Shown piece after piece: positions 38,274 through 62,098 of a stretch of DNA of 64,000 nucleotides. The notes beneath the pieces are model-generated. The model made no database searches. It was not told where the DNA came from and saw nothing but the letters and a program-made list of their open reading frames with translations. Where the stretch lies: positions 141,427-205,426 of IMG/VR virus record IMGVR_UViG_3300049846_001037; one strand, written 5' to 3'. Both the position numbers and the translations under genes were made by a program. Position 1 is the stretch's first letter. Every line of letters begins with the position of its first letter.

Positions 38274-38289
38274 TACTTAAATTTAAGTA
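38274..38289. repeat. intergenic palindrome copy 1
   Basis: TACTTAAATTTAAGTA. Confidence 0.9.
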
Positions 38290-39419
38290 AGCAGATGACC
38301 GGTCGCAGCAGATCCTCTGGATGTTCTCCCGTAAAGACAAAGACCCCGCCGAGGTTGGCAGGGTCTCTGTGGGTGGGACGAGGTGGGGTGGTTCTACTTG
38401 GTGAGGTATCCATGCTTGGGGAGGTCGGTGGGGAGAGGCATGGAGAGCAGGGCAGAGATGGAAGGAACCTTCATCTTGCAGGGAGAGTGGGCGAGGTAGT
38501 CATACTTCTTGAACGCCAGTTCCTTGCCGTGGTGAGGGCAGTCCACGTAGTCGAAAGTGTAACCCTTCTTCTTGAGTTCGGCATGGAACAGGTCGAAGTC
38601 CTTCTTCGCTTGCTTGATGGCGGGGTCGCTGGGGTTCTGCTTGATGAGTTCATTGATTTCGTCCATTGCCATTGCGATAGCATGGGCAGACATCTTGGAA
38701 GCGATTGCCTTCTTCTCTTTGATGGTCAGCATGGTTTGTCTCCGAGAAGTGATATCTTTAATGTAACTTAGATGAGGGTTCTTGTCAAGGCATATTTAGG
38801 TCTTTGAACAGGAAGTCTTTGGGGAGTTTCCTGCCGCCGAGGTGGTCGTAGATGATGAGGCAAGGCAGGGACATGATGCCAGGCACGACGAAGGAGTTGA
38901 TGAGGAGGGTCATGGGCATGGAGAAGTGAAGATGCTGGTAGCAGATGTTCCCCACAGCGAACCAGATGAGGAAGAGGACCATGAGGAAGATGCGTTGTTT
39001 GTTGTTCATGGTATTACTCCTGAGTGATGAGTAAAGTATAACAATAAAGATAGCACATGTCAAGGGGTTATCTGCCGTTGACATCGGTCCAGTAGTCATC
39101 ATCGCAACGCTCGTCCATGTTATTTCCCCCTCTTGTTGGCTTCATTGCGGAGTTTGGTCATGACTTCGAGGGCACGGGCAAGGATGGCGGCTTCGCTCTG
39201 ATGACCCAGCATGAAGACACCCAGCGAATGAACAGCATCCAACATCTCGTCATTGGGAATGGTGGGAATGCTTTGTTCCAGTTCCGCCAGCATCGCCATC
39301 TTCTCGTTGTAGACTTGGGTATCCATTGGGTTTCTCCTTAGTTGATAAAGTAATTATACTAATAAAGATAGCACATGTCAAGGGGGAGATGTTCGCCCGC
39401 TGCGAGGGAGGGGCGTTGT

Positions 39420-39435
39420 TACTTAAAGATAAGTA
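39420..39435. repeat. intergenic palindrome copy 2
   Basis: TACTTA-AAGA-TAAGTA. Confidence 0.9.
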
Positions 39436-40712
39436 AGGAGTGCAGGGCTGCAGGATCTGGCTGCGATGAGGTTGGCACAGCAAAAGACCTTCCGTGTTAG
39501 GGAAGGTCTTTGCGGGTCTTCTCTTTCTCTACCCTCTTGAGTATTTTGAGGGCGACTTGTTCTGCTTCTTCCAGCGTCATCAGAACCTTTTTCCTTACGT
39601 CATTCTTTTCTATCAGGCAGACATAAGGTTGTCGTAGACGTGGAAAGCGTATTTCTACTGTTTGTTTCTTTGGCATGGTGTCATCAGAGTGGGATGGAGA
39701 GTTCGTGGATGAGGACTTCGGTTCCGCTTTGGAGGAGGATGATATCTTCGTCGGTTCCTCCTCTTGCCACCTTGTCCCAGCGAGAGCAGGTGCCGTGGTC
39801 GGGGTCATGCCAGTAGACCACATCGCCACGCTTTACCCTGTCTGTGGATTTGAGGCGGCGTTTGGGGCATTTGGAGCAGGGACCATCTTCGCCCAGTTCG
39901 GACTGCTTGACTTTGTTGCCACAGAGCGAGCAGTATTCTTCGCCCTGAGGGTCATAGTTCCGTTTGTGGGGTTGCTTCTTGTCGGAGTTCATGTCTGCCT
40001 CAGAGGACGATGACTTCTTTCTCGTTGCGACCACCGAGGTAAGCGAAGACTTTGCTCTTATCAATCTTGATGGTCTTCACTTTGCCCTGTTTGCCAAAGC
40101 GATTAGCGAACCAAGTTGCTTTGGTCTTAGAGAGCGAGTAAGACATTCCGTTAGGGGATTTGTCGTAGCCCCGATGGATGGTGAGGAAGTCAGGGAGATT
40201 GGCGAGTTCAAGGCGGTCCTCATCGCTCATAAAGTATTCTTTGTTGGGGACTTGAGCCGTGAGGAGTTTCTTCCAGTCCTTGATGTTCTGCCAGATGTTC
40301 TCCGAGTCAATCCAGATGGAGCCGAGCAGACCCCAATAAGTCTTAGGCTCAGTAATGCGGTTGCGGATTTTGTTGAAAGCCCACAGACGATACGGACGCT
40401 CATGCCAGAAGACATAGGCATGGAAATCTCCTTCGGCAAGGCATTTGTCACACGCTTCCTGCTTCTGCTTCAACTGCTCGTTGTAGAGGGCGTTATGCTG
40501 AGGGGTGTAGAAGATTTCCTGCACCAAAGGATGCTGAATCGCCTGCCCGAAAGGTCCGTCCATCAGACAGACGTAGAGTTCGGGGGCGAGTTCTTCTTTA
40601 CGGGCGAGGACTTCCTGAAAGTTAATCATGTAGTAAGTATAACCTATTAAGCATAGCTTGTCAAGACGTGGGGCAAATAGACATGAGTGGCTGGTGATCC
40701 CTGGGAGCTAGT

Positions 40713-40728
40713 TACTTACATTTAAGTA
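40713..40728. repeat. intergenic palindrome copy 3
   Basis: TACTTA-CATT-TAAGTA. Confidence 0.9.
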
Positions 40729-42135
40729 GGAAGAGGAGGTGGCTGCAGATCCGGTCATCTGGGTGGTTGGCACAAGCAAAAGGGACTCCGATGTTTTGGA
40801 GTCCCTTTGGGTCTTAGTAGATTTCGAGTTCGTCTAGTTCTTGGGAAGTTGGGGTGGAGAATTCCTTGAGGGAGTAGCGTCTTCCTGAGTCTCTGGGCGG
40901 GTTCATGCCGCTTGTTTCTTGGACTCGGTTCCATGTGGCTATGAGTTGTTCGCCGTAGGGGCGGGACTCCACAAGGACTTTGAAAGTATTACCTTCGGAG
41001 GATTGAACAGTCATGGTCTGGAGGGTAGCGACAATGTATCCGCCTTCCCAGTTCCATGAATGATTCTTTGCTTTGGTCATCACTCTGCCCTTGCAGTCGA
41101 AGGAGTCGCCCTTGAAGAAGACGACGGCACCATGACGGGCTTTGATGCGTCGGACTTCGGTTGGTGTAACTTCCCTGTGTTTGCCTTGAGGGGGCAAAGG
41201 AAGTTCGAGGCAGTCGGGGTGGATGTTGAGTCCCATGACTATTTTCTCCTGCGGCGGCGATAAATCATTAGCAAAACTCCCCATCGAGGAAGAAGTTGCC
41301 TGATTGGTCGTTCCACTCATTCTCCCGTGATGCCCTCTGGAATTTGGCACCAATCTGTTTCCTGTCCCTGATGAGTTTGAGCAGGTCTACTGGGGTGGAG
41401 ACATCCGAGCCATTGTCGTTGGTGAGAGTATAACCTTCTTTTGCCAGCCGCTCAACACGGGCGTACCACGAGCGGACATCCACAACGCCGTTAGCCTTGT
41501 CGCCACGGAAGGTGAATTGCCAGCCTGCTGATGACTTGCCCAGATGAACGGGCTCACCAGAGACGAAGACTTCGGGAGTCATGTAGAAGTTCGTGCCCAT
41601 GTTCAGCCCTGAAAAGAGATGCCTTCGGGGTGGCTGTAGAGCGTTTCGCTCATCCAGCGTCCCATTCCCTTATACCGCTTGTCTTCGTCATCGACAAGGG
41701 CAAAAGAGGTCAGGACGTAGGACCACTTGTTGTTCATGAGGTTGCGGCTCTGCTCGTTCCACTTGGCGATGAGGGCTTCGCCAACCTTCTGGGAGACGAC
41801 GAGGATCTGCTCGTTGAAGGTCTCGTTGGTCGGGGTGTGGGTGTTGGTGTAGTTCATCAGGAGCATCTGCATGGCTTAGTCCTCCTCTTCCGCTTCGATG
41901 TCCACTTCGGGGTCTTCGAGCGTCAGATTGTTCTTGTTGACCTTCATCTTCTCCCACTTCTTCATGGCGTCCTTCTCGTTCTTGGCGGTGACGGTCACTT
42001 GTTCGGTGGCGAGGTAACGGACGGTGAGGTTGAAGGTCTTCATGGCGGTTCTCCTTGAGTGATGACTACATCATAGTCTAATAAAGCTAGCTTGTCAAGA
42101 CCGAGGTGAGCTGCGAGGGATCCCCGTGAGCTGTT

Positions 42136-42151
42136 TACTTAAAGATAAGTA
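42136..42151. repeat. intergenic palindrome copy 4
   Basis: TACTTA-AAGA-TAAGTA. Confidence 0.9.
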
Positions 42152-43294
42152 AGAAGATGTCCGGTCATCAGAAGTTGGTTGGTGGCACAAGCAAAAGCCC
42201 CGCCGTGTTAGGGCAGGGCTTTGCTTGGGATTACTGGGTTTTAGTAGGAGATGGACACATCGAAGTCGCCGTGTTCGTTGGTGGCTTCGAGGAGGGACTG
42301 GAGGGTTTCCTTGTCTTCGGGGTTGAGGTTGCGGAGGGTCTTGTTCAGTTCGTCCACTTTCTGCTTGGAGATGTAGTAGAGCCCGTTGTCGTTCATCGGG
42401 AAATGCTTCTCGATGAAGTCGGCGGAGGAGGAGCCGTTCAGCAGGCTGTGGTGTTCGATGCGATAGATGCTGACGGACATGGCGTTCTCCTTATCGGTGA
42501 ATGTTCATGGGAAGATTCTTCTTCAAGCGTTCATTGACCACCGCCGTCAAGAACACTTTCCCGAACCCTGACTTCGGGACCACCTTTTGTATCAGTTTCT
42601 TTTCTCCTTGCATGGTGATGAAGGTATCCACCTTGAAGTGTTCTTCCATTTTAGCCTTTGAGCCGTAGACTTCTACCACAGCCCCTTGCAGAACCTTGGT
42701 CAGTTCCTCATGCTTCTCATTGATAATATCACATTCCCTCTTATTAGGGAAGTTCTTCATGGGGAAGGAGATGCTATATTCTCCTTCGACAGAGTTAACA
42801 CCGCCAAAGAGGCGAAGGGACTTGCGGAAGATGAAGTCATCCAGTTTAGCCAGTTTGGATTCCAGCAGGTTGATGCCGTAGATGACGTAGGCGTTGGCGA
42901 TGGGCAACACGATGGAAAGCACCGCCGCCAGAGCCAAGCCCGAAGCCATCGCCGTCTTACCCATAGCAAGGGCGGCAAGGCAGAGGAACGAGAAGAAGAT
43001 GAAGGGGCTTCTCATGGCTTCACCTCATTGAAGGGAATGATTTCTGCCTTGATGTTCATTTCACCCAGTATTCTGATGATAATATCACATTCACTTTTTG
43101 GCAACGGGTTGATATCTTCAATAATAGTGCTAGGCTCCCCATCGAAGTCGTGGTAAGCAAAGGTGCCATCTTCGAGAGTGTAGCGTATCTGGAACATGGA
43201 GTTCTCCTTGAGTTAATGTAATTATATAAAATTAAAGATAGCTTGTCAATGGGGTTGGAGCAGGTGAGCTGGCTGGTGATCATGGGGAGCTGTT

Positions 43295-43310
43295 TACTTA
43301 CATTTAAGTA
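43295..43310. repeat. intergenic palindrome copy 5
   Basis: TACTTA-CATT-TAAGTA. Confidence 0.9.
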
Positions 43311-44364
43311 GGGAGGGAGCCCGCTGCAGATCTGCGAGTGGGTCGTCGTGAAAAGCAAAAGCCCCTCTAGAGTTCAGAGGGGCTTCGGCGTTTAAGGCTG
43401 GAGATGGTTTATTGCATGGAGGCGAAGGACTTCTGGAGGGCGAGTTTGAAGCATCGGCATTGTTCGGGGTCGAGGGAGAAGGCGAAATTGAGGCTGGGGT
43501 CTTCGAGGGCTATGCGGTTCTTCTCGGCGGCTGGCTTATCGCCAATGGTTGAGTAGTTGCTGTTCTCGTCCACGCACCACCAGAAGGTTTCGGGGTCGCT
43601 GGACTGGAAGGAACTCTCGTCCACGATGTCGCCCAGACGAATCCATTCCTTGAGGCGACGGGCACCGTTCTTGCCTTCGAGGTAAGCCCTGATGGCTTCG
43701 ACGGCTTCGCCCTGTTCGTTGTGGTCAGCGAGAACATGGATGGTGAAGTCATGCTTCTTGCTGTTGCGGAACTTGAAGGAAGTCTGGACCAGATTCTTCT
43801 GAGCCAACTTCCTGATGGACTTGGGGATGGCTCCGAACTCGAACTCGGCAGAGCCCATGTAGTCGAGGCTCATGTAGTCGGAGACCTTCTCACCTGCGTA
43901 GAACGTGACCTTGGGTTTGCATCGCTGGACGAGCCACATGGTCTACTCCTTTCCTTCGAGGATGATGTCTCCAGCCTTAGGCTTGCCGAAGTTTTGCTTC
44001 ATCGGCTTGCCCATGTTGCCACCGACACGGACGAAGATATCGTGGTCGGCATGATGGACTTCAATGACTGTGGCGGCATTGGTGTGGATACCGCCGTTCT
44101 TGCTGTGAGCCGCAACATCTCCCTGCCCATAGCGGAAATGGTCAGAGTGTTGGTAGGCGGCAACGTGTTGGATAGCGTCAGCCAGCTTCTTGCCGAACTC
44201 AGGGTCGTTCTTGATGGCATCGAGGGCATCCACCATCACAACCAACGTGGCATTGTATCCCATGACGTGTCTCCTTTGAGTGATGGAGTAAGTATAACTA
44301 ATTGGCCGATGCTTGTCAACGCATCTCCGCCTGCGAGCTGCTGGGGATCACCGGCTGCAGTGCT

Positions 44365-44380
44365 TACTTAAATTTAAGTA
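44365..44380. repeat. intergenic palindrome copy 6
   Basis: TACTTAAATTTAAGTA. Confidence 0.9.
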
Positions 44381-45478
44381 GGCGGCCGTCTTCCTCGCAG
44401 CGGGCTGGGACATCTCGGCGCAGCAAAAAGCCCACACCTGCTGGGGTATGGGCTTGCGGCAACAGACTGCTGGAGATGATTACTTCTTCAACGCCTTGTC
44501 AATCATCTCTTGGACTTCTTTGACTATTTTATCTTTGGCTGTCTTCTCAATGGTGGCTCGGAACATGGGACGAAGGGACTCACGCTCGTAGTCGCTCACC
44601 TTTAAGCCTGCGAGGATTTCGTCTTCCACTTTGCGTAGCGTAGGAATCATCTGTTCAAAGGTCTTGAGCATCTGAACACGCAGAAACTCATTGACCTGCT
44701 CAATTTGTTTATGAACAGATTCTTGTTCCATCTCTTTTAGTGTGTTGAGTAGGTCAGCCATTGGGCACCTTCATTGAAGCAAGACAATCTTTGCAGGTGA
44801 CTTTCTTCCAGTCAAAGGAAGATTGGGGGTCATCGTATTTCATGCCATCGTAGTCGCAGAGGATGTAGGATTCATCTTCTCCACTTGATTGGGAGCAGGT
44901 CTCTCCAGCGGCGGCATGCACGACCTTCATGGCTTCTGCTCCTTGTAGTTCACCATCTCTGCGATCTTTTTCAGGAGCTCATAGTTGTCCTGAACGCCCA
45001 CCACATTACCGAGGTAGTGAGCGTTAGCCTTGACCCACGCCTTGCGTTCCACTTCTTCCATTGAGAAGCAGACCCCACGCAGAGTTCCTTCACGCAGTTC
45101 CTTCTTGGAAATCTTGATGGGGTTGCGCCAGTCCTTGCCCACAATCCAAGACTGGGTGGTTTCCCCGTCAATGGTGTGAGGACGCCAATGTTCCTTCCAG
45201 ATGGGTCCGCCAGTTGAGCGACCCTGAGCATCTTTGGCGTAGACTCTGTGGTTGTCTTCGAAGATGTAGATGGTTGAGCCGATCATTTTTGACTCCTGAG
45301 ATATTCCTGATGCATCTTGCGAATGTGTTTGGTGTTTTGGCGTTTAGTATACAGCCCAGAAGCCACAAGGAAAAGGATGAAGACCAGCCATGTGATATCC
45401 ATTACTTGGCTCCTTTGAATTTCTTCTTGGCTTTCTTGTATTTGCGTAGGCGGCTCATGACACATCCTATAAGGGGGC

Positions 45479-45579: not shown

Positions 45580-45663
45580 TGTCATCAGTATAACTTTCTG
45601 GGAGACCCTTGTCAATGACGCCAGCAGCTCTGGGGACGCCGCTGCTGATCCCCGGGAGCTGGT

Positions 45664-45679
45664 TACTTAAATTTAAGTA
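45664..45679. repeat. intergenic palindrome copy 7
   Basis: TACTTAAATTTAAGTA. Confidence 0.9.
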
Positions 45680-45769
45680 AGCCAGGACATCACGGGCTGC
45701 GGCGGAGATGTGGCGCAAAAATAAGCCCCCTTATTTTATATAAAACTATTAGATTATAAGGGGGTTCAC

Positions 45770-46273: not shown

Positions 46274-48021
46274 TTTTTACGTCAGCCAGGGCGGTTTCCT
46301 GCGGCGGTCTGTCCAAGTCCCAGAGGGCGGGAGAGACCTATGCGGCAGGAAAGGGGTTCAAGTCTCTATATTTGTTCATACAGCAGAGCGGGGCTAAACT
46401 TTATTTTCTTCTTGGCAAAATTACACCTTAGCCACTTATCATCTATGCGTGACCTTTCAGCCTTTTTCTTGCGATTCTTCATTGCCTTTTCAACAGCCTT
46501 ATTTCTTTGAGCAATATACTCATCTGTTAAAAAGACATCATCATCCCAGTTATTGATTCTCATGTTGCGCCTAGAAGATGCCCTTACGGGCGAAGGCTCG
46601 GCGTTCTGCCCTGTTGCGGGGGACTGGGGCATTGTGCAGGTTCGCCACCATGTTGCCCAGTTCACGTTGGACGGCTTCGCTCTTGCGCTTGAGGGTGTAG
46701 AGCGAGAAGGTGGTCTTGATGGCGTAGAGCAGTCGGCGGAAGAACTTCATGGCTTGCTCCTTTTCTTAGAGGCTTGCTTGCGGCTCTGGACCATGTGGTG
46801 AGCGTCCCGTAAGGCTGAGTTTATCTTGGCGAACATCGGGTCGTCAAGAGTAAACCCCATGCCGAAAAGCAATTCGACCAGTTTGCTTAACTTGGTGTGA
46901 AACTCAGCCAGTTCCTTGTCGGTAAGAGCCTGAGCCCTCATGTATTTGGCGTAGAGGTCGGTGAGTTTCATGGTTCGGTCAGCCCGTCAAAGGCTCCCTT
47001 CTTGATGCAGGCAGAGCAGTTGTCCTTGCCGTTGCGTGTGACCTTGCCGCAAGTCAGGCAGAGGTCTTGCGATCTGACGGGCGTGTAGACAGTCCCGCAA
47101 GAGGGGCACTCATCATCGCAGGTGGAGTCCCAGTCGCTCGTCCACTTCTCCCTGCACTTTTTGCAATGGTAGTGGTTGCGGAAACGCATGACTGCTTCTT
47201 CGTGGAGTGTGTTGCTCATGGCTTACCCCTTCACGTTGATGGGCAGGCGGGTGTAGGAGTAGCCCTTCGTGGTGAGTTCGAAGGCGTAGTGGACTTCCTT
47301 GATGGAGCAGATGAAGCCAAAGGGACGCTTGGTGGCTTTGACGAAGGTAGCCCCATGCTGTTCGACCAGAGGCTTCATCACGTTGCCGTAATCGTTGATG
47401 TTCTCGTAAGCCCTCTCGTCCATCCAACGGGAGTAGAGGTTGCAGAGGGCATCTTCCAGTTTCTTGGACTCGAAGATGGTCTTAGCCACCCTCTTGATGC
47501 CGTTGATGATGGTGTCGGTTTCGGCTGGGGTCATTTTGACCTTGAGCCAAGAGGGGCAGGGAGTAGGCTTGTGAGGCATGGCATTCTCCTTTGAGTTACC
47601 CCTATACTAAACCATTTACTTTAGCTTGTCAATAGACCCGCAAATCATTTTTGCTCATCAGGTCCATTTCTTGGGGCGTAGGCGTGACCTTTATACCTGC
47701 CATGCGTTCCCCCAGTAAGCCAGTATCCACACGCCAGCCTGCACATTCTTCTGCGATGTTCTGGGGTATCATCTGTTCGTTCTCACCGAACCTGTTGGCA
47801 TCATCGCATATCTTCTTGGCTTCTGTCTCGGTATACAGACCTGCCTGATGCAAGTCATTGGTATAGCCGTTGGAAGCAGGTCGCCACCAGCAGGCAATAC
47901 CCTTTGGATGTTCATGTTCAATTGACCTGATGTAGTAAAGCATTGGTTCCTCCAGTTGTTCCCAGTCTAACCTGCGGAAGTCACGTCGTCAAGCCCTCTG
48001 GGGATCAGGAGGGGGTGTTCC

Positions 48022-48037
48022 TACTTAAATTTAAGTA
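48022..48037. repeat. intergenic palindrome copy 8
   Basis: cc-TACTTAAATTTAAGTA-gg. Confidence 0.9.
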
Positions 48038-49550
48038 GGTACTGCAGAGCTGCAGGGCGGCACTGCAGGGCGCAAAGAAAAAGCCCCCGTGTTGCTGGGG
48101 GCTTATTCTTGGGAGCCTATCTTTTTCCAGTCCATTAGGGCTTGGCTATATCTGGGTTGTTCATCGTAATCATCATCGTAGTTATTTCCCCATTTGTTGC
48201 CCCTAACAGCCCCATCCACCTGCCTTAGCCGGTCACGCATTTGCCTATTCTCTTCTTGAAGGAAATGAAGAAGTTCCATCATCTCCTTAACCTTCTTTGG
48301 GGTGGTGGGAGGAACATGAGTCAACTCTTCCTCTAAGTCCCGAACAGTCTTCTCCAGTTCATCGACGGTATGTTCGTAGGTCTTTATTTCTTTATCCTTG
48401 TCATCGATCTCTTTCTGCATCTTGCCTTTCTCTTTTTCATGTTCAGAATCTTTTTCTTCTAACTTGTTCTCCAGAGAGGTGATGGTATCCCGTGCAGAAT
48501 CAAGTTCCTGTTCTAAGACAGGAACCTTTTCTGCTTCCTTCTTCAACTCCTCGTATGTGTGGAGATGGTCTAGAAGTCCCATTTACTTGAGGTGAGGGAA
48601 TTGTTCTTTCTCCCACTCCATCCCTTTCGTGAAGGCTCGGTGTATCCAGAAGAAGCAGATGCCAGCGATGAAGAATGGCAGGGTGATGGCTCTTGCGAAC
48701 TTCTCTCGGTTGCTCATTTCTTTTCTCCGATGATGGGAGGCAGGATGATGACCTTCTCACAGACCTTGGAGTAGGTATTGCCGCTCTTGCATCTCCAGAT
48801 GTTCAAGCAGCCCTCTGGCGTTCCCTCATAGCCGGTGCCGATGGCTTCGCAGTCATCCTCTCGGCCGTCCATGAAGGTGATGTGGAAATACTTGGGAGGC
48901 GTATCCTCACAGCCAGCCAAGAACCCCACGCAGAGGAGAGCAAGAAAAAGATTCTTCATCGGCTCACCTCGTAGTAGTTGCATTCATGTTCGTTGCAGGC
49001 TTGATGCTTGGGAGTCCAGATGAGTCCAAAGAGGTGAGGCTCGACCATCTGCCAGTTGTAGCGGGCATAGCCGACACGAGCTTCGGAACGGACGAAACGC
49101 ATCTTCTCACAGCCCAGTCCGATGGTGCCATAGAGTTTCGGAGCGATGTAGAACTTGGGGATGAAGAGGTAGAGGACCAGAGCCGCCAAGCCCCAGCCAG
49201 CCCAGTCGTTGATGAAGGTAGACACGGCTTCGGCATGGGGAATGGTGAGGCAGAGCAGGAGCGTGGTGCCGCCATAGAGGATCATCAGAAGGTCGTAGAT
49301 GTTGATGTAGCCATCCTTAGCCAGTCGCCCACGCAAGAGGCGATAGGTAGGACGAGCCAGCAGCACAGCAGAGAAGATGTAGAGCGGCAGGAGGCTTCTC
49401 ATGACTTCACCTCAAACTCTTTAGAGGAATAGGAGTAGTCGGGGTTCGTCTTCGTTGCTATGAACTTGTCAGCCGCTTCTTGGCTCAGGAAAATATCCTC
49501 CACCTCTGGAGACTCCCATGCCAAACAATGCTTGAAGACAACATAGACCT

Positions 49551-50590: not shown

Positions 50591-50714
50591 GGTATTCTCC
50601 TGAGTTATGAGCAAAGTATAACTAATTAATGATAGCTTGTCAAGAGGATTGTTATTGTATTTTTGTAAAGAGACTCCATCTGGGAGCCCTGGGATCCTAG
50701 CTCCCGTCGTAGGC

Positions 50715-50730
50715 TACTTAAAAATAAGTA
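50715..50730. repeat. intergenic palindrome copy 9
   Basis: TACTTA-AAAA-TAAGTA. Confidence 0.9.
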
Positions 50731-50833
50731 AGGGCAGCAGGTGGCAGCGGGCGGAGGTGGCAGGCTGCTCTGGGCGCAAAGAAAAAGCCCTCCGTTTCCA
50801 GAGGGCTTCTTCTTGCTTGGGTTGGCGAGGGTG

Positions 50834-51034
50834 TTAGTGGCGGCGGAGGTTCATGCCGAGCCGCTTCATGGCGACCAGGAGCGGGACGTACTTGAGGTTG
50901 GAGCCGTTCTTGCTGTTGACGCTCTTGAGGACCGCCTTGAGGCTCTTGGTGGGCGTGACCATCGCCACCAGCTTCTGGATGCGCTCCTTGGTGTAGATGG
51001 CGGGGCGACCACGCTTGCTCGTCTGCTTCTTCAT
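50834..51034 (-). CDS. small basic DNA-binding protein (AT-hook-like KRGRP plus helical domain)
   Basis: MKKQTSKRGRPAIYTKERIQ...YVPLLVAMKRLG; has its own promoter and terminator. Confidence 0.5.
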   Translation of the reverse strand: MKKQTSKRGRPAIYTKERIQKLVAMVTPTKSLKAVLKSVNSKNGSNLKYVPLLVAMKRLGMNLRRH

Positions 51035-53215: not shown

Positions 53216-53658
53216 GGGGTTTCCATCCTTTCAGCCGCTTGGTGCAATCGGAGTTCCAGCCCAGTTCCCGCCAAGCCTTGCGGCAGGACTCAACACGGGT
53301 CATCCCCTGCTTCTCGTACTTGAAGGCGAGTTCGTTGCATTGACGCAGACGCATCAGGCGGGTGTATTCCTTCTCCCCAATGCGGCGGCGAAAGGCTTTC
53401 TCGGTCTGTTGGCTCTGGTATTCGCCCCAAGAGAGTCCCGTCTTCTTCTCGAAGTCCTTGTGGGACTGGTCCAGAGCCTTCTCAGCCAACTTAACAGCGT
53501 CAAGCAGGTCATAATACTTCTTGGCGGCGGTGTGGACGTTGGCTTTGGCGGACTTGAGGATTTGGGCTTTGGTGGACATGGGCTTCTCCCTTGAGTTGAA
53601 CCCATGATAAACTAATTCCCTGAACTTGTCAACGCCCGCTGCGAGGAGGTGGCTCGTT

Positions 53659-53674
53659 TACTTAAATTTAAGTA
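53659..53674. repeat. intergenic palindrome copy 10
   Basis: TACTTAAATTTAAGTA. Confidence 0.9.
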
Positions 53675-54040
53675 GTCTTCAGGATCCTGCAGAGCTCTGC
53701 AGCTGCAGCCTTAAGCAAGAAACCCCATCAAGCTTTCTGATGGGGTTCTCGTGGGAATCTGCTGATGTCTATTCGTTCTGGTGTGTGGCTGGGACTATAT
53801 CGTTCTTGTTTCTTGTAGAGCCTATTTGCAGGTATCCCGTATTTCCTGCCCTCGAACATTACCCTACACCAGTCTTTATCTTTCTGGGTGAACACCGCAA
53901 CAACTTCTACTTTCCTGACTGGGGGAGAGCTAAGTCTTTTGTCCCCATCTACGAAGGCATAGTCGGTGTAGGCTATGCTGGACTTCTCTGCCGAGGGTTT
54001 GTTGTGGTGGGTCAGTTTAATGAACCCCGGCACTTTGTCT

Positions 54041-54811: not shown

Positions 54812-54907
54812 AGTGGGGTCATTGTATTACATCTGGCTGGTTCGTCAAGTGGCCAATTTTACAAAAGGGGCTTGCTCGCTGGTGGTTTTGATGGCTCGCT
54901 ACCGATT

Positions 54908-54923
54908 TACTTAAATTTAAGTA
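54908..54923. repeat. intergenic palindrome copy 11
   Basis: TACTTAAATTTAAGTA. Confidence 0.9.
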
Positions 54924-55127
54924 GAGACTCGCCTGCAGCTAAGCCCGGATATACTGCAGTGCGCTTAAGAGCCCCATTGGGAAATAAGGGTTTTCAGACG
55001 CCTAGCTGCAGGGATCTGCAGATATGTGCCGCTAATCTCCTGGGCACGAGCTTAGTACGCCTGGGCACAACAAAAAAGCTCCCCAGCTTGAGGGAGCTTT
55101 CTTGTGCGGCTACGGGCTTACGCTTTC

Positions 55128-55370
55128 TTAGGCTACTACGGCTTCTGGCTTCTTAGCCGCATTTGCCTTTTTAATTTCGGCGTATTTCTTGGGTATCTTC
55201 AACCCATAACGCCTGATGGCTCGATTGATGGAGACATAGGGCCATTTATGACCGCCTTCCATCTTCTCGGTCTTCTCTCGGCATTGCTCCTTGATGGGCT
55301 TGCCAAGAGTCTCCTTAATTCTTATCATTTCCTTGATGTCATCTTCCGTGTAACATATGGGGCGAGGCAT
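55128..55370 (-). CDS. small basic DNA-binding protein, apparent paralog of 50834-51034
   Basis: MPRPICYTEDDI...YVSINRAIRRYGL. Confidence 0.45.
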   Translation of the reverse strand: MPRPICYTEDDIKEMIRIKETLGKPIKEQCREKTEKMEGGHKWPYVSINRAIRRYGLKIPKKYAEIKKANAAKKPEAVVA

Positions 55371-56670: not shown

Positions 56671-56958
56671 TCATTGCTCCACCTCTTTGGTCAGAGATTG
56701 GCAGAGTTGGTAGTAGCTGCCATTGCCTAAAGCTGTGGGACTGCCATAGAGCTTCCAGCCATCCTGGAGCATTTGGTTGACTCGCCTGCTCAGGTCATCC
56801 TCGCTGCTATCGCAGACCATCGAGTAGACCGTCACCTTCTTCGGCACCTTCTGCTCCTTCGCCCCAGACAACTGGAAGGGGACGAAGACCGCCAAGAAGA
56901 CGAGACACATCAGCGATGCCCAACCTTGTGGCGTGAGACGCTTGAAGAACTTCTTCAT
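56671..56958 (-). CDS. membrane-anchored DUF1737-like protein
   Basis: TM segment followed by LSRRVNQMLQDGWKLYGSP...LCQSLTK. Confidence 0.55.
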   Translation of the reverse strand: MKKFFKRLTPQGWASLMCLVFLAVFVPFQLSGAKEQKVPKKVTVYSMVCDSSEDDLSRRVNQMLQDGWKLYGSPTALGNGSYYQLCQSLTKEVEQ

Positions 56959-56968
56959 GGCTGGCTCC

Positions 56969-57505
56969 TCAGATGAACTTCACCTTGATGGCGACGATGT
57001 TGCCCTTGGCGTCTTCACGGGTGTAGGCGGTGTAGGAGCCATCGCCGTAACCGCTGCTCGACACGGCTCCGTGAGGCATGACGCCACCGTGGTTCTCGTG
57101 GTTGGGGTCTTCCTCGTTGCCGCAGGTGAGGGAGCAGGCGGCAGCGTAGAAGGGAGCCCCGCCATCCTTGTCCTTGTCCTTCGCCATCTTCTCCCATTGC
57201 TTGGTGATCTTGCCCACCGACTCCGAAGCCTTGCGGTAGAACTTGTCATCGAAGATGGACATCTGACCGCTGTCCACGCCGCAGTCGATGTTGAGGGCGA
57301 TCCACTTGTCGGCAGGCTTCGCCTTGGCGTGGGTCACGACCAGGCTGGCGACACGTCCCTCACGGTTGAGGTTGGCGGTAGCCTTCCACTCGCCCTTGAG
57401 GACGCCGCTGACGGTACCGGCGCAGATGGTGCCCTTCTCGTAGCAAGGGTCGGAGATGCGGACTTTGCCGGTCTCGATGGTGAAGGTTCCGATGGACTTC
57501 TTCAT
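56969..57505 (-). CDS. DUF4241-like protein
   Basis: GKVRISDPCY, GVDSGQMSIFD and SSGYGDGSY motifs. Confidence 0.55.
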   Translation of the reverse strand: MKKSIGTFTIETGKVRISDPCYEKGTICAGTVSGVLKGEWKATANLNREGRVASLVVTHAKAKPADKWIALNIDCGVDSGQMSIFDDKFYRKASESVGKITKQWEKMAKDKDKDGGAPFYAAACSLTCGNEEDPNHENHGGVMPHGAVSSSGYGDGSYTAYTREDAKGNIVAIKVKFI

Positions 57506-59044
57506 GGTCTACTCCTGAGAAAAGTCGATGCTGATGTTCTTGATGTTGCGGAACGCCTTCCACAAGGCATTCTCCTGCTTCTCGACCATCTCACGGGAGC
57601 CACGCAGAGTCAACCCCAGATTGATGTCGTAGGTGCGGTTCTTCGTCTGCTGGAAGTTGAAGCCCCCACCCGTGACCCTGAACTTCTTGGGGAACCCCTT
57701 GGGCAGACGGCTGTTGACCCGCTCACGAGCCTTCTGCTCGAAGGTCTCGTCATCGAAACGCTGTTCGAAAGGGATCTTGATGGTGACATCCACGATGGTC
57801 TTCATGGCTTACTCTCCCTCAGGATGCAGGAACTCTTGGATGTCGTCCGCCTTCCAGTCGCCCTGCTTCTTAGCCCTGATGCGGAATGCCTTCTCGTTGA
57901 GACGTTGGTTGCTGACGGGCATGGAGACCCCAGTCAGGGAAGTCCTCTCAGCGAAGCCCTCGTTCATCTCCGCCACAGCATCATCCAGCGTGATGGTCTT
58001 GGGTATGGGCTTGGTGGAGAGGATTTCCACCTGAACGACGGTCCTGTAGAAAGCCATGTCAGACTCCGGAGAAGGGCTTGCAACGGGTGACTCTGGTCAG
58101 TTTTCTGCCACCAGTCAACTCGGTGATGAGTTCGACTTCACCCTCTAAGGAGTGAGTGGAACCGAACTGAGGAACTGAGGCGTGGGACTTCAAGGAGCGA
58201 GTCCACACGAAGATGTTGCCTTCACGGTCTTCGAACATGAGGGTGTAGTTGTGGGCATTCACAGCCCCTCGTGTCTCCTTGACGTAGACCACCTTACCCG
58301 TGAAGATTGCCTTCATGGCTACACCAGAGAGCAGGCAACACGGTGGGCGGCCAGCAAGTCGGCAGCACCCTCATCGCCATCACCGTTGGTGTAATCGTAC
58401 TTCTTCTCCAGGTTCTTGGACCATTGGCGGTAGAACGCCATGTCGGGCAGGTCATCGTGTCCCGTGAAGCAGGTCTCGTCGTCATCAGCGCCAGGGCAGG
58501 TCGAGAGCAGTTCCACCTCAGGCTTTTCCTCCTGCCCCAGCTCCCAGCCCATCTGCTTGAGCAAACGGACCATCTCGTTGGCGACCACGGTCTCGTTCTT
58601 GCTGAGTTTGTAGATGACCTGCATGGCTTCCTCCTGCTCTTGAGTTGACTCCATACTAACTTAAAGAGTACTACTTGTCAAGCCACCACGGTCAGCCCCC
58701 GCTTCATCTGCTTCTCCCACTCATCCGAATAGGCTTTGGGACGCAACAGGTTCTTTTGCTTGGGATGACCATTGCGATAAGCCCAACGGCAGACATTCTC
58801 AGCATAGTTGCGACCATTACGCCTGACACCCATCTTCCCCAGAAACTTCTCCTCAGCATGTCGAGGGTTCTTGGCTCGTAGGGGCTTATGAGTCCAACAG
58901 CACATGTCGCTGTGGATGATGGCGAAGACATAGTAACGGGGCATGGGGTTCTCCAAGTGATGTCTTAGTATAACTTCCCAGCAGCCACTCGTCAACCGTC
59001 GGCCGCAGCCAACTGCCGTCGTTGGGATCTGGGAGCCCCTTGTC

Positions 59045-59060
59045 TACTTAAATTTAAGTA
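59045..59060. repeat. intergenic palindrome copy 12
   Basis: TACTTAAATTTAAGTA. Confidence 0.9.
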
Positions 59061-59462
59061 AGCGCCGATGTCCGGTCGTTGGGCGATGAGCTCTACCCAG
59101 AAAACAGAAAAGCCCCACCCTTTCGGATGAGGCTCTTCTGTGCACCCGGCGTACCACCCTATGCTGATCCATGGGTCATAGGGAACCCGTCTTACACTTA
59201 ATACCGATGCTTGATGGCGGCGAATTGGGCGAAGGTGAGGGTAGGCTTGATGCCCTTCAACTGGCAGTAAGCCTTCCACAACTCTCTGTCGCAGGTGTAT
59301 TCGCCAGGAGTCGGCTCACACTCGATGTTGTCGATGAACTGAGCCGCTGTGTGGGAGTCGATGTCCTCCACACGCTCGAAGCCCCAGATGTCTTTGAGGT
59401 AATTGCGGCTCTCCCTCGAAAGGGGAAAAGCCGTCTTGAGGGTGGCGGACATCTTTGACTCC

Positions 59463-59561
59463 TTAGTGGTTGAAGTGCTGTACCACCGCTGCCCCGATGA
59501 CGAACAGGATGGCGATGACGATGACCAGTTCGACCAAGGTGAAGCCTCGTTGGTTACGCAT
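59463..59561 (-). CDS. 32-aa mini type IV prepilin (class III signal peptide plus hydrophobic helix only)
   Basis: MRNQRG/FTLVELVIVIAILFVIGAAVVQHFNH*; GAGG RBS; below the length cutoff of the ORF track. Confidence 0.8.
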   Translation of the reverse strand: MRNQRGFTLVELVIVIAILFVIGAAVVQHFNH

Positions 59562-60950
59562 GACTACCTCGAAGGGGAACGATGGACTTGCTGACGCCAG
59601 ATGTGGGCGGTGATGGTTCGGTCAGCCTCCATCTTCTTGTCCAGAAGCTTGTTGTACTTCCTCCGTCCATAGGCTTGGGCGGCGATGAGCTTGCGGCAGA
59701 GAGCAGCCAGCCTCTTGACATTGCGAGGCGTAGGGTTCTTGAGAGCCGCTTGGATGACTGCCTCTTGCTGCGTCATGTCCGACTCCTACTAGATGAGCTT
59801 CTTGCGGCGGAGTTTGGTCCGCAGGTTCTTGAGAGCCTTGATCTGGTTGCGGAGCTGAACGCCCTCCAGGCTGTGACCCAGATCGTGGATGCTGACGTTC
59901 TGGAGGTAGGTCTTGTACTTCTTCTCCAAGACCTTGATCTCTTCGTTGATGACATCGCTCACACGGAGTCCCATGACTTACCTCAAGAGGGATTGGAGTT
60001 GCGTCATTTCCTCGGTCAGAGTTTCATGGCGGCGTTTGGGACTGTTCCAAGAATCAAGATAGTCCCTGTCCACCAGAGCCGCAGCAGCATCCTTGACGGC
60101 TCGTTGGATATGCTTCTGAGGAACCTCAACCTTCATCTTGAGAAGGTCCAAGACCACACCAACCAAGACAGTTGGATTGTAGTCGTTTGCCTTGATCTTG
60201 TCAAGCGCCCTGCTCAGGTTGTTCTCAGTCAGAGATGCCCTGTTGCGACGGAAGTAGTCCATCTCGTCTTGGACATCATCGCAGGCAGTGCTCTGTTCGC
60301 CCCAGGCTCCCATGACTTACCTCAGATGCTTCGGTTGGCGGTTGACCCACTTCTGCCATTGAGCGAAGGTCATGTCCGCAGGCAGGTTGTGGAAGGCGAG
60401 GTACTTCTCGGTGATGCTGTGGTCATCGGGCCAGACTTCCTTGGGCTCCTCTTCACGGTTCTCGATGAAGAGCGCCACCCAGCCCAGAGGCAACTGGCTG
60501 ATGTCCTTGATGCCCTTGGGCTCCCCATCGTACATCTGCTTGATGTACTTGATCTCCGATGGGGTCAGCGTGGTCGTCACCTTGTTGCGAGAGTGGAGCT
60601 GCTTCTTGAAGGCTTCGATCTGAGCCTTCTTCTTCTTGGCGTCTTTCCGCAGATGCTTGACGGTCTTCCGCAGCTCGTCCATGATCTGACCAGCGAGGTC
60701 ATCGTCGGGCTTGGCAATGTGGACAGCGTGGTTTTGGTGAGGCATGGCGTTCCTCCTTGATGTTGAACCCATCATAAACCAAACGCCTTAACTTGTCAAT
60801 AGTAGCCCTTCAGCCTAATGAGAGACCAGCGAAGTTTATATAGATTGGTGAGGGCTTCATCAATGGTCTTGATGAACACAGGGCATCCAGCAGTCCTCTT
60901 GAGTCTCTGCATCTTCGTTATCTCTTTGCTGACGATTTCTCCATTGGCTG

Positions 60951-61571
60951 TCATTTGACCTCCAATGCCCTGACCTTCTTTGCGATGACTTTATGCATCC
61001 CAGGGTTGATGAGCAGAGCCTCTGGAACAATGCCATGTCGAACCCTATTACGAGCATGACCCATATCCTCGTTGGTCATGTCCTCAGTCCAAGGAACATG
61101 CTTGTTCTCGGCATAGATGATCAGGTCAGATTTTGTGGTAAGGAGGAAAGGACGGACGACATTCTTATTGCGGTAGGGGATGAGTTTGGGAACCCCATGA
61201 CAGGCACCCATCAGCCATGTCTCAATCTGGTCATCGAGATGATGGGCGGTGATGACTGGGACTTCAAGGCTATGGAAAAACTTGTAGCGTTCATCTCGCC
61301 AGTATTCTTCCCAAGACTTGCTCTTAGGCTTGTCCGAAGAAATCCTCTGAGCAATCATCCCAGTCAGTCCCATCTGGGTGAGGAAGTCCAGAGCCTTGGC
61401 GGAAGTCTCAGTGCCGTGGTCAAAGAAGACAGGGGCAATACGCCGCTTGCCATTGACCCCATGCTTGAGGAAGTGATAGACGGCCATGGAGTCTACGCCA
61501 CCAGAGACGGCAACGTAATGCAACTGGTCATATTGAGGAAGGCTTCCGAGAATCTTTAGCATAGCGCCCAC
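60951..61571 (-). CDS. tilS: tRNA(Ile)-lysidine synthase, catalytic domain only
   Basis: PP-loop AVSGGVDS, RDERY, TAHHLDDQIET, RPFL, EDMTN, RNRVRH. Confidence 0.85.
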   Translation of the reverse strand: MGAMLKILGSLPQYDQLHYVAVSGGVDSMAVYHFLKHGVNGKRRIAPVFFDHGTETSAKALDFLTQMGLTGMIAQRISSDKPKSKSWEEYWRDERYKFFHSLEVPVITAHHLDDQIETWLMGACHGVPKLIPYRNKNVVRPFLLTTKSDLIIYAENKHVPWTEDMTNEDMGHARNRVRHGIVPEALLINPGMHKVIAKKVRALEVK

Positions 61572-62000
61572 ACCGTCCTGTCTGCCCGCATCTCCACCAA
61601 CCTAGCCCTCTCAGCCTTCTCGTTGGTGTCAGCGAAGTAGAAGTGGTCAGCCTTGTAAGGGTTGTACTTCACCTGCCGCAGTTTGGCTTCGGAGCTCAAC
61701 ACTACACCAAACTCAGGTATCTTGCCAATGACGAAGGCGTGGACATTCTTACGCTTCTGCTCAAGGACTCGCTTATGCCCACCCGGACGAACACGGAATT
61801 CCACATTCGTCACAACCACAGACTTCTCATGCCCCACAACCTTGCCCCCAACCATCAGAGACCAGATGGACTTATGCAGGTTGTAGTAGATGTAGGTCTT
61901 CATGTCGTCCTCCTTGAGATGGGTTAATATAACTTAAGGAGAAAGACATGTCAAACTCCTATCTGCGATCCTGCAGGGACATGGCACCACCTCCTTTCTC

Positions 62001-62016
62001 TACTTAAATTTAAGTA
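62001..62016. repeat. intergenic palindrome copy 13
   Basis: TACTTAAATTTAAGTA. Confidence 0.9.
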
Positions 62017-62098
62017 ACCGACTTCCTCCTCCCGTGTTAGCACCGACGACAGCCCAAAACAAAAAACCCCCAGTCGTTAGACTGAGGGCTTTTTGTAG

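What the first reader, a model, noticed from the sequence alone, without database searches (positions are those of the whole stretch)
39376..62016. Palindrome-to-promoter distances are helically phased
Seen: gaps between the -35 hexamer and the palindrome for copies 2-13 are 38, 48, 37, 45, 45, 48, 29, 71, 26, 59, 49 and 46 bp. They cluster at 26-29, 37-38, 45-49, 59 and 71, in steps of about 10-11 bp, which puts site centres near -71, -81, -91, -102 and -114. Established: class I activators such as CRP and Fis work at about -61, -71, -82, -92 and -102, on the same helix face as RNAP alpha-CTD. Inference: the bound protein contacts RNAP or bends DNA toward it, which favours a transcription-factor role over a pure recombination site. 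With n=12 and up to 3 bp scatter this is suggestive only.
Basis: partly seen in the sequence, partly recalled or inferred. Interest (0 to 1): 0.65.

Follow-up and report, generated by a model that had tools for sequence, protein, structure and literature searches.

The report
Terminator-linked palindromic operator, not helically phased
A 16-bp palindrome repeated 13 times in the early region of a freshwater jumbo phage is a conserved protein-binding site that sits a fixed ~47 bp after each transcription terminator, and its distance to the next promoter shows no helical phasing once 40 more copies from related phages are counted.

Summary
The measured gaps are exact: 38, 48, 37, 45, 45, 48, 29, 71, 26, 59, 49 and 46 bp. 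In this genome alone they look phased (Rayleigh R=0.60, p=0.010 at 10.5 bp). Four spacers are paralogous, which weakens this to p=0.03-0.14.

I found seven related phages in metagenomes with the same architecture. Their 40 additional palindrome-to-promoter gaps are not phased (R=0.18, p=0.27; V-test against this genome's phase p=0.26). Only a weak preference (R about 0.2) remains possible.

The window is the early end of a 205-kb uncultured phage. The motif is T-TACTT-N6-AAGTA-A. The outer pentamers are invariant in all 62 copies across eight phages, and the centre is lineage-specific (AAATTT, ATATTT or GTATAC).

Every copy follows an intrinsic terminator, 43-53 bp after the stem in 12 of 13. 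The distance to the promoter is loose (14-97 bp), and the promoters are near-consensus sigma-70 types that need no activator. About ten copies across the phages have no promoter at all.

I read it as the operator of a dimeric DNA-binding protein built into PeSL-like terminator-promoter cassettes. Its likely role is early-gene shut-off or insulation. The binder is unidentified. One weak candidate is a 66-aa protein with an RGRP arm and a three-helix domain.

The parts
38274..38367 (-). Cassette 1, the last in the direction of transcription. Terminator stem 38340-38367; palindrome 38274-38289 (perfect), 50 bp after the stem. No sigma-70 promoter follows.
39353..39509 (-). Cassette 2. Terminator stem 39485-39509; palindrome 39420-39435 (centre AAAGAT), 49 bp after the stem; gap 38; promoter TTGACA-17-TATAAT at 39381-39353.
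40636..40807 (-). Cassette 3. Terminator stem 40780-40807; palindrome 40713-40728 (centre ACATTT), 51 bp after the stem; gap 48; promoter 40664-40636.
42070..42221 (-). Cassette 4. Terminator stem 42195-42221; palindrome 42136-42151, 43 bp after the stem; gap 37; promoter 42098-42070.
43221..43386 (-). Cassette 5. Terminator stem 43358-43386; palindrome 43295-43310, 47 bp after the stem; gap 45; promoter 43249-43221 (12 of 12).
44291..44454 (-). Cassette 6. Terminator stem 44429-44454; palindrome 44365-44380, 48 bp after the stem; gap 45; promoter 44319-44291.
45587..45767 (-). Cassette 7. Long-loop terminator 45723-45767; palindrome 45664-45679, 43 bp after the stem; gap 48; promoter 45615-45587.
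47964..48104 (-). Cassette 8. Terminator stem 48081-48104; palindrome 48022-48037, 43 bp after the stem; gap 29; weaker promoter 47992-47964 (9 of 12).
50615..50809 (-). Cassette 9. Terminator stem 50784-50809; palindrome 50715-50730 (centre AAAAAT), 53 bp after the stem; gap 71; promoter 50643-50615. It precedes the WGR-domain gene.
53604..53747 (-). Cassette 10. Terminator stem 53721-53747; palindrome 53659-53674, 46 bp after the stem; gap 26; promoter 53632-53604.
54821..55102 (-). Cassette 11, the exception. Terminator stem 55073-55102 lies 149 bp upstream. A CTGCAG-rich stretch follows, then palindrome 54908-54923; gap 59; promoter 54848-54821. It precedes the Metallophos gene. The same unusual layout occurs in phages B, C, F and G.
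58967..59136 (-). Cassette 12. Terminator stem 59109-59136; palindrome 59045-59060, 48 bp after the stem; gap 49; promoter 58995-58967.
61926..62091 (-). Cassette 13, the first in the direction of transcription. Terminator stem 62064-62091; palindrome 62001-62016, 47 bp after the stem; gap 46; promoter 61954-61926.
50834..51034 (-). Tentative candidate binder. A 66-aa basic protein (pI 11.8) with an invariant N-terminal RGRPxIYT arm and a predicted three-helix domain. It is encoded directly upstream of cassette 9.
   Evidence: Homologues occur in phages B, D, F and H; the gene lies immediately upstream of a palindrome cassette in D and F and upstream of one in B. AF2 pLDDT is 80. The best fold match is the phage Sf6 small-terminase HTH domain, Z=4.1, rmsd 2.5 A over 51 residues, followed by many HTH domains at Z about 3. 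These Z values are below the tool's own level of significance. There is no Pfam hit.

Best explanation
The repeat is the operator of a dimeric, sequence-specific DNA-binding protein. It is built into composite terminator-operator-promoter cassettes that separate the early transcription units of a family of uncultured freshwater jumbo phages.

Shown:
- The recognised unit is T-TACTT-N6-AAGTA-A. The two inverted pentamers lie 11 bp centre to centre, one helical turn apart, around an AT-rich centre.
- It lies 43-53 bp downstream of an intrinsic terminator stem.
- It lies a loosely constrained 14-97 bp upstream of a near-consensus host sigma-70 promoter.
- Sometimes no promoter follows at all.
- The spacing to the promoter carries no helical phase.

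Inferred:
- Because the promoters are intrinsically strong, the bound protein most likely acts negatively or architecturally. It could shut off or silence the early units once a phage sigma factor takes over. It could also insulate units by backing up the terminator as a roadblock, much as a stoperator does.
- It is unlikely to be a face-specific activator.
- The binder is probably phage-encoded. A weak candidate is the 66-aa RGRP-arm three-helix protein at window 50834-51034.
For: Motif and distribution:
- 13 copies against 0.15 expected, all in the early array and none in the other 181 kb.
- Half-site spacing is exactly 6 bp in 13 of 13 copies, with none at 0-5 or 7 bp.
- All variation within this genome falls in the central 6 bp.
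- Flanking positions -1 (T) and +16 (A) are also conserved, extending the symmetry to 18 bp.

Conservation across relatives:
- The identical 16-mer occurs in phages B, C, D, E and G, whose proteins are 35-92% identical and whose early regions range from 27 to 53% GC.
- Phage F has TACTTGTATACAAGTA in the same position. Phage H has TACTTATATTTAAGTA.
- In alignments of corresponding intergenic regions, only the terminator T-run, the palindrome and the -35/-10 boxes are conserved.

Coupling to the terminator:
- All 13 copies here follow a terminator, 12 of them at 43-53 bp.
- Across phages the terminator distance has median 47 and IQR 43-52. The distance to the -35 has median 38 and IQR 29-48.
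- The T-run shows through at -44 to -48 when 39 copies are aligned on the palindrome.
- About nine intergenic strong promoters that lack an upstream terminator also lack the palindrome.

Phasing: uniform in 40 new copies.

Promoters and later transcription:
- The promoters match the consensus at 9-12 of 12 positions.
- A phage sigma factor is encoded at genome position 90.8 kb.

Other readings made less likely:
- The hairpin is weak, -2.7 to -5.6 kcal/mol.
- No integrase or resolvase is detected.
Against: - No binder has been shown. None of HTH_3, HU, ParB, HTH_17 or RHH_1 is detectable in the genome, and there is no HTH Pfam hit among 62 early proteins.
- The candidate rests on a motif and fold matches at Z=3-4, which the tool rates as non-specific.
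- Promoters and terminators are consensus predictions. No RNA data exist for this phage.
- The sign of regulation is inferred, not shown.
- A site 14-97 bp upstream of the -35 is an unusual position for a simple repressor.
- A weak phase preference (R about 0.2) cannot be excluded. Pooled n=52 gives p=0.06, but that includes the discovery set.
- Phages D and E were first found with a pattern that required the exact palindrome. This inflates the apparent sequence conservation. Phages B, C, F, G and H were found by protein homology.
Confidence: 0.6

Rival explanations
1. One reading: a class I-type activator (CRP/Fis-like) binds the palindrome on the same helix face as RNAP and contacts the alpha-CTD or bends DNA toward it.
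For: - The 12 gaps of this genome give R=0.60, p=0.010 at 10.5 bp.
- Site centres of -69.5 to -114.5 lie near the classical class I positions.
- Two hand-picked groups of corresponding promoters differ by about 10-12 bp steps: 26/27/36/38 and 29/37/49/60.
- Pooled n=52 gives p=0.06.
Against: - 40 independent copies give R=0.18, p=0.27, and a V-test against the predicted phase gives p=0.26.
- A true R of 0.4 or more is rejected at p=0.01.
- Systematic grouping of units across phages by their first downstream protein gives p=0.57.
- Gaps as short as 14-18 bp and as long as 89-97 bp occur.
- Near-consensus -35 and -10 boxes need no activator.
- About ten copies across the phages (9 of the 54 tabulated, plus one in phage H) lack a promoter.
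- The spacing to the terminator is tighter than the spacing to the promoter.
- Four of the 12 spacers are paralogues.
Confidence: 0.07
2. The palindrome is mainly a recombination or linker site. It mediates shuffling, duplication and loss of early gene cassettes, in the manner of PeSLs or integron attC sites.
For: - Cassette content and order differ between relatives, with breakpoints at the intergenic modules.
- One gene (45770-46273) is inverted relative to its homologue in phage D.
- The centre variant is homogenised within each genome: GTATAC in all 13 F copies, and the asymmetric ATATTT, in one orientation, in 6 of 8 H copies. This suggests gene conversion between copies.
- PeSLs are documented to recombine (PMC2839356).
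Against: - No integrase or resolvase is detected.
- 16-18 bp is short for homologous exchange.
- The symmetric core gives no directionality.
- Invariant outer pentamers with a tolerant centre, and an exact 6-bp spacing, fit a protein operator.
- This role is not exclusive of the operator role.
Confidence: 0.13
3. The site is bound by a host protein, such as a nucleoid-associated protein or global regulator, that the phage exploits.
For: - No recognisable DNA-binding family is detected in the phage.
- The outer pentamers are identical in all eight phages.
- The site is an AT-rich island in GC-rich DNA.
Against: - The phages carrying the site range from 27 to 53% GC in the early region, which suggests different hosts.
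- The lineage-specific centres are homogeneous within each phage.
- A scan of 185,579 species genomes for the palindrome followed by TTGACA gave only 4 scattered single hits and no regulon-like cluster.
- The host is unknown, so this reading cannot be tested directly.
Confidence: 0.15
4. The palindrome acts as a nucleic-acid structure, either a DNA cruciform or an RNA hairpin, rather than as a duplex protein site.
For: - It is a perfect inverted repeat.
- Symmetry is kept in the F variant, where the centre changes from AAATTT to GTATAC.
Against: - The stem is only 6-8 AT-rich bp, -2.7 to -5.6 kcal/mol as ssDNA.
- It lies downstream of strong intrinsic terminators and upstream of promoters, so it is mostly untranscribed.
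- Variants within this genome, and the main H variant, break the central symmetry without compensation.
Confidence: 0.03

Closest known systems
PeSLs (promoter-early stem-loops) of T4-like phages (PMC2839356, PMC4122927)
   Same: Both are composite intergenic cassettes: an effective stem-loop terminator, an AT-rich stretch, a strong sigma-70-like early promoter and a Shine-Dalgarno sequence. Both are repeated between small ORFan genes in a plastic early region. In both, cassettes are shuffled between relatives.
   Different: PeSLs have no discrete, invariant palindromic operator, only an AT-rich region next to the -35. Here a 16-18-bp palindrome lies a fixed ~47 bp after the terminator and a variable distance before the promoter. 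This phage is not T4-like: it has a DnaE-type polymerase, nearly all genes on one strand, and no close relative in the phage databases.
Stoperators of cluster A mycobacteriophages (PMC9283540)
   Same: In both, many copies of one protein-binding site are spread through intergenic spaces of a phage genome. Some are not at promoters, so the bound protein is thought to stop elongation as well as repress.
   Different: Stoperators are asymmetric 13-14-bp sites. They are bound by a monomeric immunity repressor, oriented with respect to transcription, and spread across the whole genome of temperate phages. Here the site is a palindrome restricted to the early array and always behind an intrinsic terminator. 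No integrase or recognisable repressor is present.
phiC31 conserved inverted repeats bound by the c repressor, and KorB OB operators of plasmid RK2 (from my own knowledge, not checked here)
   Same: Both involve a dozen or more identical palindromic operators at variable distances from promoters, used for global control of a replicon.
   Different: The cognate proteins are known there and unknown here. No ParB/KorB-like domain is detected. The fixed spacing to a terminator is not a described feature of those systems.
Phage 434-type operators (ACAA-N6-TTGT) of dimeric HTH repressors (own knowledge)
   Same: Both have conserved outer half-sites one helical turn apart and a non-conserved AT-rich centre that can tune affinity.
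   Different: 434 operators overlap the promoters they control. These sites lie 14-97 bp upstream of the -35.
Class I CRP/Fis activator sites
   Same: Both are palindromic sites upstream of the -35. In this one genome the centres happen to fall near -71, -81, -91, -102 and -114.
   Different: There is no phase in 40 further copies. The promoters are consensus-strength. Some sites occur without a promoter.

Membership tests
Class I activator site (CRP/Fis type) | Site centres restricted to one helix face (about -61.5, -71.5, -82.5, -92.5), i.e. gaps phased at about 10.5 bp | tested here: not met
   This genome: R=0.60, p=0.010. 40 copies in 7 relatives: R=0.18, p=0.27; V-test p=0.26. Cross-phage groups sharing the downstream gene: p=0.57.
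Class I activator site (CRP/Fis type) | Target promoters are weak without the activator (poor -35 box or UP element) | tested here: not met
   All 12 promoters have a TTGAC(A/G) -35 box, 11 of them a 17-bp spacer (copy 11 has 16 bp), and 9-12 of 12 consensus matches.
Class I activator site (CRP/Fis type) | The bound protein contacts the RNAP alpha-CTD | not testable with these tools
   Binder unknown; no RNA or biochemical data.
PeSL-type regulatory cassette | Stem-loop terminator directly upstream of a strong sigma-70-like early promoter and SD, repeated in intergenic spaces | tested here: met
   13 terminators and 12 promoters. The same layout occurs in relatives.
PeSL-type regulatory cassette | Flanks small ORFan genes in a plastic region that is shuffled between relatives | tested here: met
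   62 early ORFs gave matches to only 26 Pfam families (E<=0.01), many of them weak coiled-coil-type hits, so most ORFs have no match. Conservation among relatives is patchy.
PeSL-type regulatory cassette | Host phage belongs to the T4-like myoviruses | tested here: not met
   DnaE-type polymerase with best phage hits at about 33% identity. No close relative in INPHARED or IMG/VR.
PeSL-type regulatory cassette | Recombination between copies (mini-circles) | not testable with these tools
   Only contig-level DNA runs are available.
Stoperator | Asymmetric site in one orientation relative to transcription | tested here: not met
   8 of 13 copies are perfect palindromes. Only phage H has a one-base asymmetry.
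Stoperator | Bound by the immunity repressor of a temperate phage | tested here: not met
   No integrase, resolvase or HTH_3 repressor detected in a record estimated 90% complete.
Operator of a dimeric HTH-type protein | Inverted half-sites one helical turn apart; outer bases conserved, centre tolerant | tested here: met
   TACTT-N6-AAGTA in 13 of 13 copies, with no other spacing from 0 to 7 bp. The centre varies within and between phages.
Operator of a dimeric HTH-type protein | Cognate DNA-binding protein identified | tested here: inconclusive
   The candidate 66-aa RGRP-arm three-helix protein has pLDDT 80 and a best fold match to the Sf6 TerS HTH at Z=4.1, with no Pfam hit. This is not significant on its own.
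Site-specific recombination site | Recombinase encoded nearby, and inverted arms around an asymmetric crossover spacer | tested here: not met
   No PF00589 or PF00239 match in the genome. The centre AAATTT is symmetric.

The most novel reading that the evidence does not exclude
The palindrome is a terminator-tethered operator, a kind of transcription-unit punctuation not described before. A small phage protein, possibly the RGRP-arm three-helix protein, would sit a fixed ~47 bp downstream of each intrinsic terminator and work with it. It could act as a roadblock or boundary that seals early units, or switch the whole early array off at once. This would occur in a previously undescribed family of freshwater jumbo phages, with lineage-specific operator centres co-evolving with the binder.
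Probability: 0.25. Interest if true: 0.6.

Novelty: new variant of a known kind. Interest (0 to 1): 0.4.

Why it matters
The specific claim, helical phasing implying class I activation, fails its own test and should not be carried forward. What remains is still useful. It is a clean, strongly conserved operator with about 13 copies per genome in an uncultured jumbo-phage family. Its geometry points to the terminator, not the promoter. That gives a concrete handle on how large virulent phages organise and shut down their early host-takeover genes. It also extends the PeSL concept of self-contained regulatory cassettes beyond T4-like phages. The binder is unknown, and finding it would be straightforward with the site in hand.

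Tried and rejected
**Searches for relatives**
- Megablast of 8 kb against phage records: no match.
- Exact 16-mer scan of IMG/VR: 56 loci, essentially all single chance hits with no homology to the early region.
- The search for related loci with the DnaB-like helicase: nothing.
- The search for related loci with the PP-loop protein: 14 IMG/VR loci from other phages, none with the palindrome.
- Scan of species genomes for the palindrome plus TTGACA: 4 scattered hits and no host clue.
- Paper search for the 16-mer: none.

**Expression data**
- The look-up of sequencing runs: only freshwater and sediment DNA runs and no RNA.

**Search for the binder**
- No HTH_3, HU, ParB_N, HTH_17 or RHH_1 in the genome.
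- No HTH Pfam hit among 62 early proteins.
- The most conserved early protein (93 aa, 55418-55699) folded poorly (pLDDT 61, alpha-beta3-alpha topology) and had no PDB match.
- Foldseek of the 66-aa candidate found nothing. A profile search of PDB sequences found nothing.
- Complex prediction of the 66-aa protein as a homodimer returned no verdict. This is not evidence either way.

**Phasing side-test**
- The hand-picked groups of corresponding promoters hinted at conserved phase (p=0.05). The hint vanished with systematic grouping (p=0.57).

Full report
**Context.** The window is the last 64 kb of a single-contig virus record of 205,426 bp. The record is linear and estimated about 90% complete. 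Nearly all genes lie on the minus strand.

The genome encodes a DnaE-type polymerase, helicases, ribonucleotide reductase, an SbcC-like protein and a sigma factor. It has no close relative in the phage or IMG/VR collections. Runs that hold the sequence are freshwater and freshwater-sediment metagenomes, and none is RNA.

Window 38-64 kb is a higher-GC array (about 52% against 45%) of some 65 small genes with few Pfam matches. This is a typical early, host-takeover region.

**The observation.** TACTTAAATTTAAGTA, allowing up to 2 mismatches, occurs 13 times, against 0.15 expected from shuffles. All copies lie between 38274 and 62016, and none lies elsewhere in the genome.

On the minus strand each copy sits in the same layout:
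- gene end
- GC-rich hairpin plus T-run
- a spacer
- the palindrome
- a second spacer
- TTGAC(A/G), a 17-bp spacer (16 bp in copy 11), then TATAMT-like -10 box
- ACTCAAGGAGA and the ATG

Copy 1 has a terminator but no promoter.

**Phasing in this genome.** The Rayleigh test gives R=0.60, p=0.010 at 10.5 bp, with a broad optimum at 10.9 bp. Two cautions apply.
- Copies 3, 4, 5 and 7 share a paralogous spacer (family D7, 72-87% identical over 46 nt). Counting them once gives p=0.03-0.14.
- A best R this high somewhere between 5 and 20 bp arises in 13% of random sets.

**More copies.** No further copies exist in this genome, so I looked for relatives.
- A metagenome scan for the palindrome followed by TTGACA found contigs with 2-3 copies each. 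Their ORFs are 35-62% identical to this phage's early proteins. These are phage D (GC about 37%) and phage E (GC 27%).
- A homologue search with the most conserved early protein (93 aa) led to contigs of phages B, C, D and F, extended by walking along the B and F contigs, and of phage G.
- A homologue search with the 66-aa protein led to phage H.

B, C, D, E and G carry the identical 16-mer in the same terminator-palindrome-promoter layout. F carries TACTTGTATACAAGTA (13 copies) and H mostly TACTTATATTTAAGTA.

Their gaps are:

| Phage | Gaps (bp) |
|---|---|
| B | 54, 37, 32, 38, 41, 42, 26, 36, 71, 53 |
| C | 29, 44, 27 |
| D | 18, 32, 24, 43, 44, 15, 37, 97, 16 |
| E | 28 |
| F | 48, 60, 35, 36, 51, 24, 53, 26, 33 |
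| G | 35 |
| H | 26, 14, 89, 32, 35, 49, 43 |

These 40 copies give the following results.
- R=0.18, p=0.27 at 10.5 bp, and no better at 10 or 11 bp.
- A V-test against the phase seen in this genome gives p=0.26.
- If the true concentration were R=0.6, such a low value would essentially never occur. For R=0.4 the probability is 0.01, and for R=0.3 it is 0.08.
- The pooled 52 copies give p=0.06, but that figure includes the discovery set.
- Units in different phages that share the same first downstream protein differ by indels that are not multiples of a turn (p=0.57). An earlier hand-picked grouping had hinted otherwise (p=0.05).

Some phage D copies were found with a pattern that limited the gap to 24-54 bp. 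That range spans about three turns, so it does not bias the phase. Only a weak preference cannot be excluded.

**What the element is.** The half-sites TACTT and AAGTA are separated by exactly 6 bp in all 13 copies, and no other spacing from 0 to 7 bp occurs in the genome. Their centres are 11 bp apart, one helical turn.

All sequence variation within this genome is in the central 6 bp. Across eight phages the pentamers are invariant while the centre is AAATTT, ATATTT or GTATAC. Positions -1 (T) and +16 (A) are also conserved, which gives an 18-bp symmetric unit.

In alignments of corresponding intergenic regions from A, B, C and F, only the T-run, the palindrome and the -35/-10 boxes stand out. 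The spacers differ in both sequence and length. As ssDNA the palindrome folds weakly, at -2.7 to -5.6 kcal/mol. This is the signature of an operator for a dimeric protein, not of a structural hairpin.

**Coupling to the terminator.** All 13 copies follow an intrinsic terminator. In 12 the stem ends 43-53 bp before the palindrome (sd about 3). The exception is cassette 11, at 149 bp, and it has the same odd layout in phages B, C, F and G.

Over 54 copies in six phages, the terminator distance has median 47 and IQR 43-52. The distance to the promoter has median 38 and IQR 29-48. Nine of these copies have no promoter, as does one more in phage H. They include the last copy of the array in A, B and F.

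Aligned on the palindrome, 39 high-GC copies still show the T-run at -44 to -48, although the spacer sequence itself is not conserved. Conversely, about nine strong intergenic promoters that directly abut the preceding gene, with no terminator, have no palindrome. The palindrome therefore belongs to the boundary of the transcription unit rather than to the promoter as such. Why the ~47-bp length is kept is unexplained.

**Mechanism.**

*Shown:* a conserved dimer-type operator; fixed spacing to terminators; loose, unphased spacing to near-consensus sigma-70 promoters; a phage sigma factor elsewhere in the genome.

*Inferred:* consensus promoters need no activator. The bound protein therefore most likely represses or silences the early units when transcription switches to the phage sigma, or insulates units by backing up the terminator in a stoperator-like way (PMC9283540).

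A phage-encoded binder is favoured. The site is shared by phages with 27-53% GC, and each lineage has its own homogeneous centre. However, no standard DNA-binding family is detectable in the genome.

One candidate emerged, the 66-aa basic protein at 50834-51034.
- It has an invariant RGRPxIYT N-terminal arm.
- It has a confident three-helix model, pLDDT 80.
- Its best structural match is the HTH domain of the phage Sf6 small terminase (Z=4.1, rmsd 2.5 A over 51 residues), followed by many HTH domains at Z about 3.
- These Z values are below the level the tool calls specific, and Foldseek, Pfam and PDB-sequence searches were blank. It is only a lead.

**Comparison with known systems.** The cassettes work like the PeSLs of T4-like phages, which combine a terminator stem-loop, an AT-rich stretch, a strong early promoter and an SD between ORFans, and which drive modular shuffling (PMC2839356, PMC4122927). 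Cassette content is indeed shuffled among the relatives here.

The differences are the discrete invariant operator, its fixed distance from the terminator, and a phage lineage that is not T4-like. Multi-copy operators at variable distance from promoters are also known from three other systems: cluster A stoperators, which are asymmetric and bound by a monomeric repressor (PMC9283540), phiC31 CIRs, and RK2 KorB sites (the last two from my own knowledge). I therefore rate this as a new variant of a known kind.

**Verdict.** The numbers are right, and the helical-phase reading is not supported. The element is a terminator-linked palindromic operator within PeSL-like early cassettes of an undescribed freshwater jumbo-phage family. 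Its binder and its sign of action are still open.

Noticed in passing
window 37950-38270 (minus strand); L100:17060-17400; L111:13610-13950: Just downstream of the last palindrome lies a ~250-bp non-coding stretch. It is far better conserved between phages A, B and F than the neighbouring proteins. It has long invariant blocks, including a DnaA-box-like TTATCCAAA and A/T tracts. There is no Rfam match. It could be an origin, a non-coding RNA or the switch to middle transcription.
   Followed up: partly
window 38000-62300, within 70 bp of the palindromes: CTGCAG is concentrated at the cassettes: 14 of 17 sites against 1.4 expected, p=4e-13. It often occurs as 2-3 tandem copies on the terminator side at +20 to +25 from the palindrome centre. 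The same enrichment is seen in phages B, C, F and H but not in the low-GC phage D.
   Followed up: partly
window 38000-64000 against the rest of the genome: GATC is about 2.3-fold depleted in the early region (15-18 per 10 kb against about 40). Yet 14 of the 45 remaining sites sit beside palindromes, and 7 of those lie at a fixed offset of -23 to -25 from the centre on the promoter side. This suggests restriction avoidance in the first-entering DNA, together with a retained, possibly methylation-related motif.
   Followed up: partly
window 45470-45585 (minus strand): The promoter of cassette 7 is followed by a tRNA-like 3' portion (T-arm, acceptor and CCA-like end) instead of an obvious ORF start. 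Neither ARAGORN nor Rfam calls it.
   Followed up: no
window 45770-46273 (+ strand): This is the only opposite-strand gene inside the array, a 167-aa cysteine-rich basic protein. Its homologue in phage D (L074:3-368, 48% identity) is co-oriented with the array, so an inversion has occurred in one lineage.
   Followed up: no
G000:C1:90768-90914 and 89026-89160 (outside the window): The phage encodes a sigma factor: a 257-aa ORF with a Sigma70_r4 match at 59.8 bits. A second, weak sigma-like ORF may also be present. This implies host-RNAP redirection after the early phase.
   Followed up: no
L112:12276 and L098:4868: TACTTAAGTA, the two pentamers abutted without the 6-bp centre, occurs once each in phages B and F. 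Both occurrences lie at the same orthologous place, upstream of the DUF932 gene and downstream of a promoter-less palindrome.
   Followed up: no
L115 (phage H, NCBI assembly contig): In phage H, 6 of 8 copies carry the same one-base asymmetric centre (ATATTT), all in the same orientation relative to transcription. This points to concerted evolution of the copies within a genome.
   Followed up: partly
window 48103-61903: The early array carries an RNA/DNA-repair-like gene set. The members are a PP-loop ATPase (60951-61571), a Metallophos phosphoesterase (54041-54811), a WGR-domain protein (49898-50590), a cREC_REC protein, DUF4241 and an L5 gp82-like protein. Relatives add DNA and RNA ligases and prepilin-type N_methyl peptides.
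   Followed up: no
window 63076-63253: Two tRNA genes, Pro-CGG and Met-CAT, lie at the upstream end of the array. At 63695-63731/63656-63684 there is one terminator-promoter junction without a palindrome.
   Followed up: no
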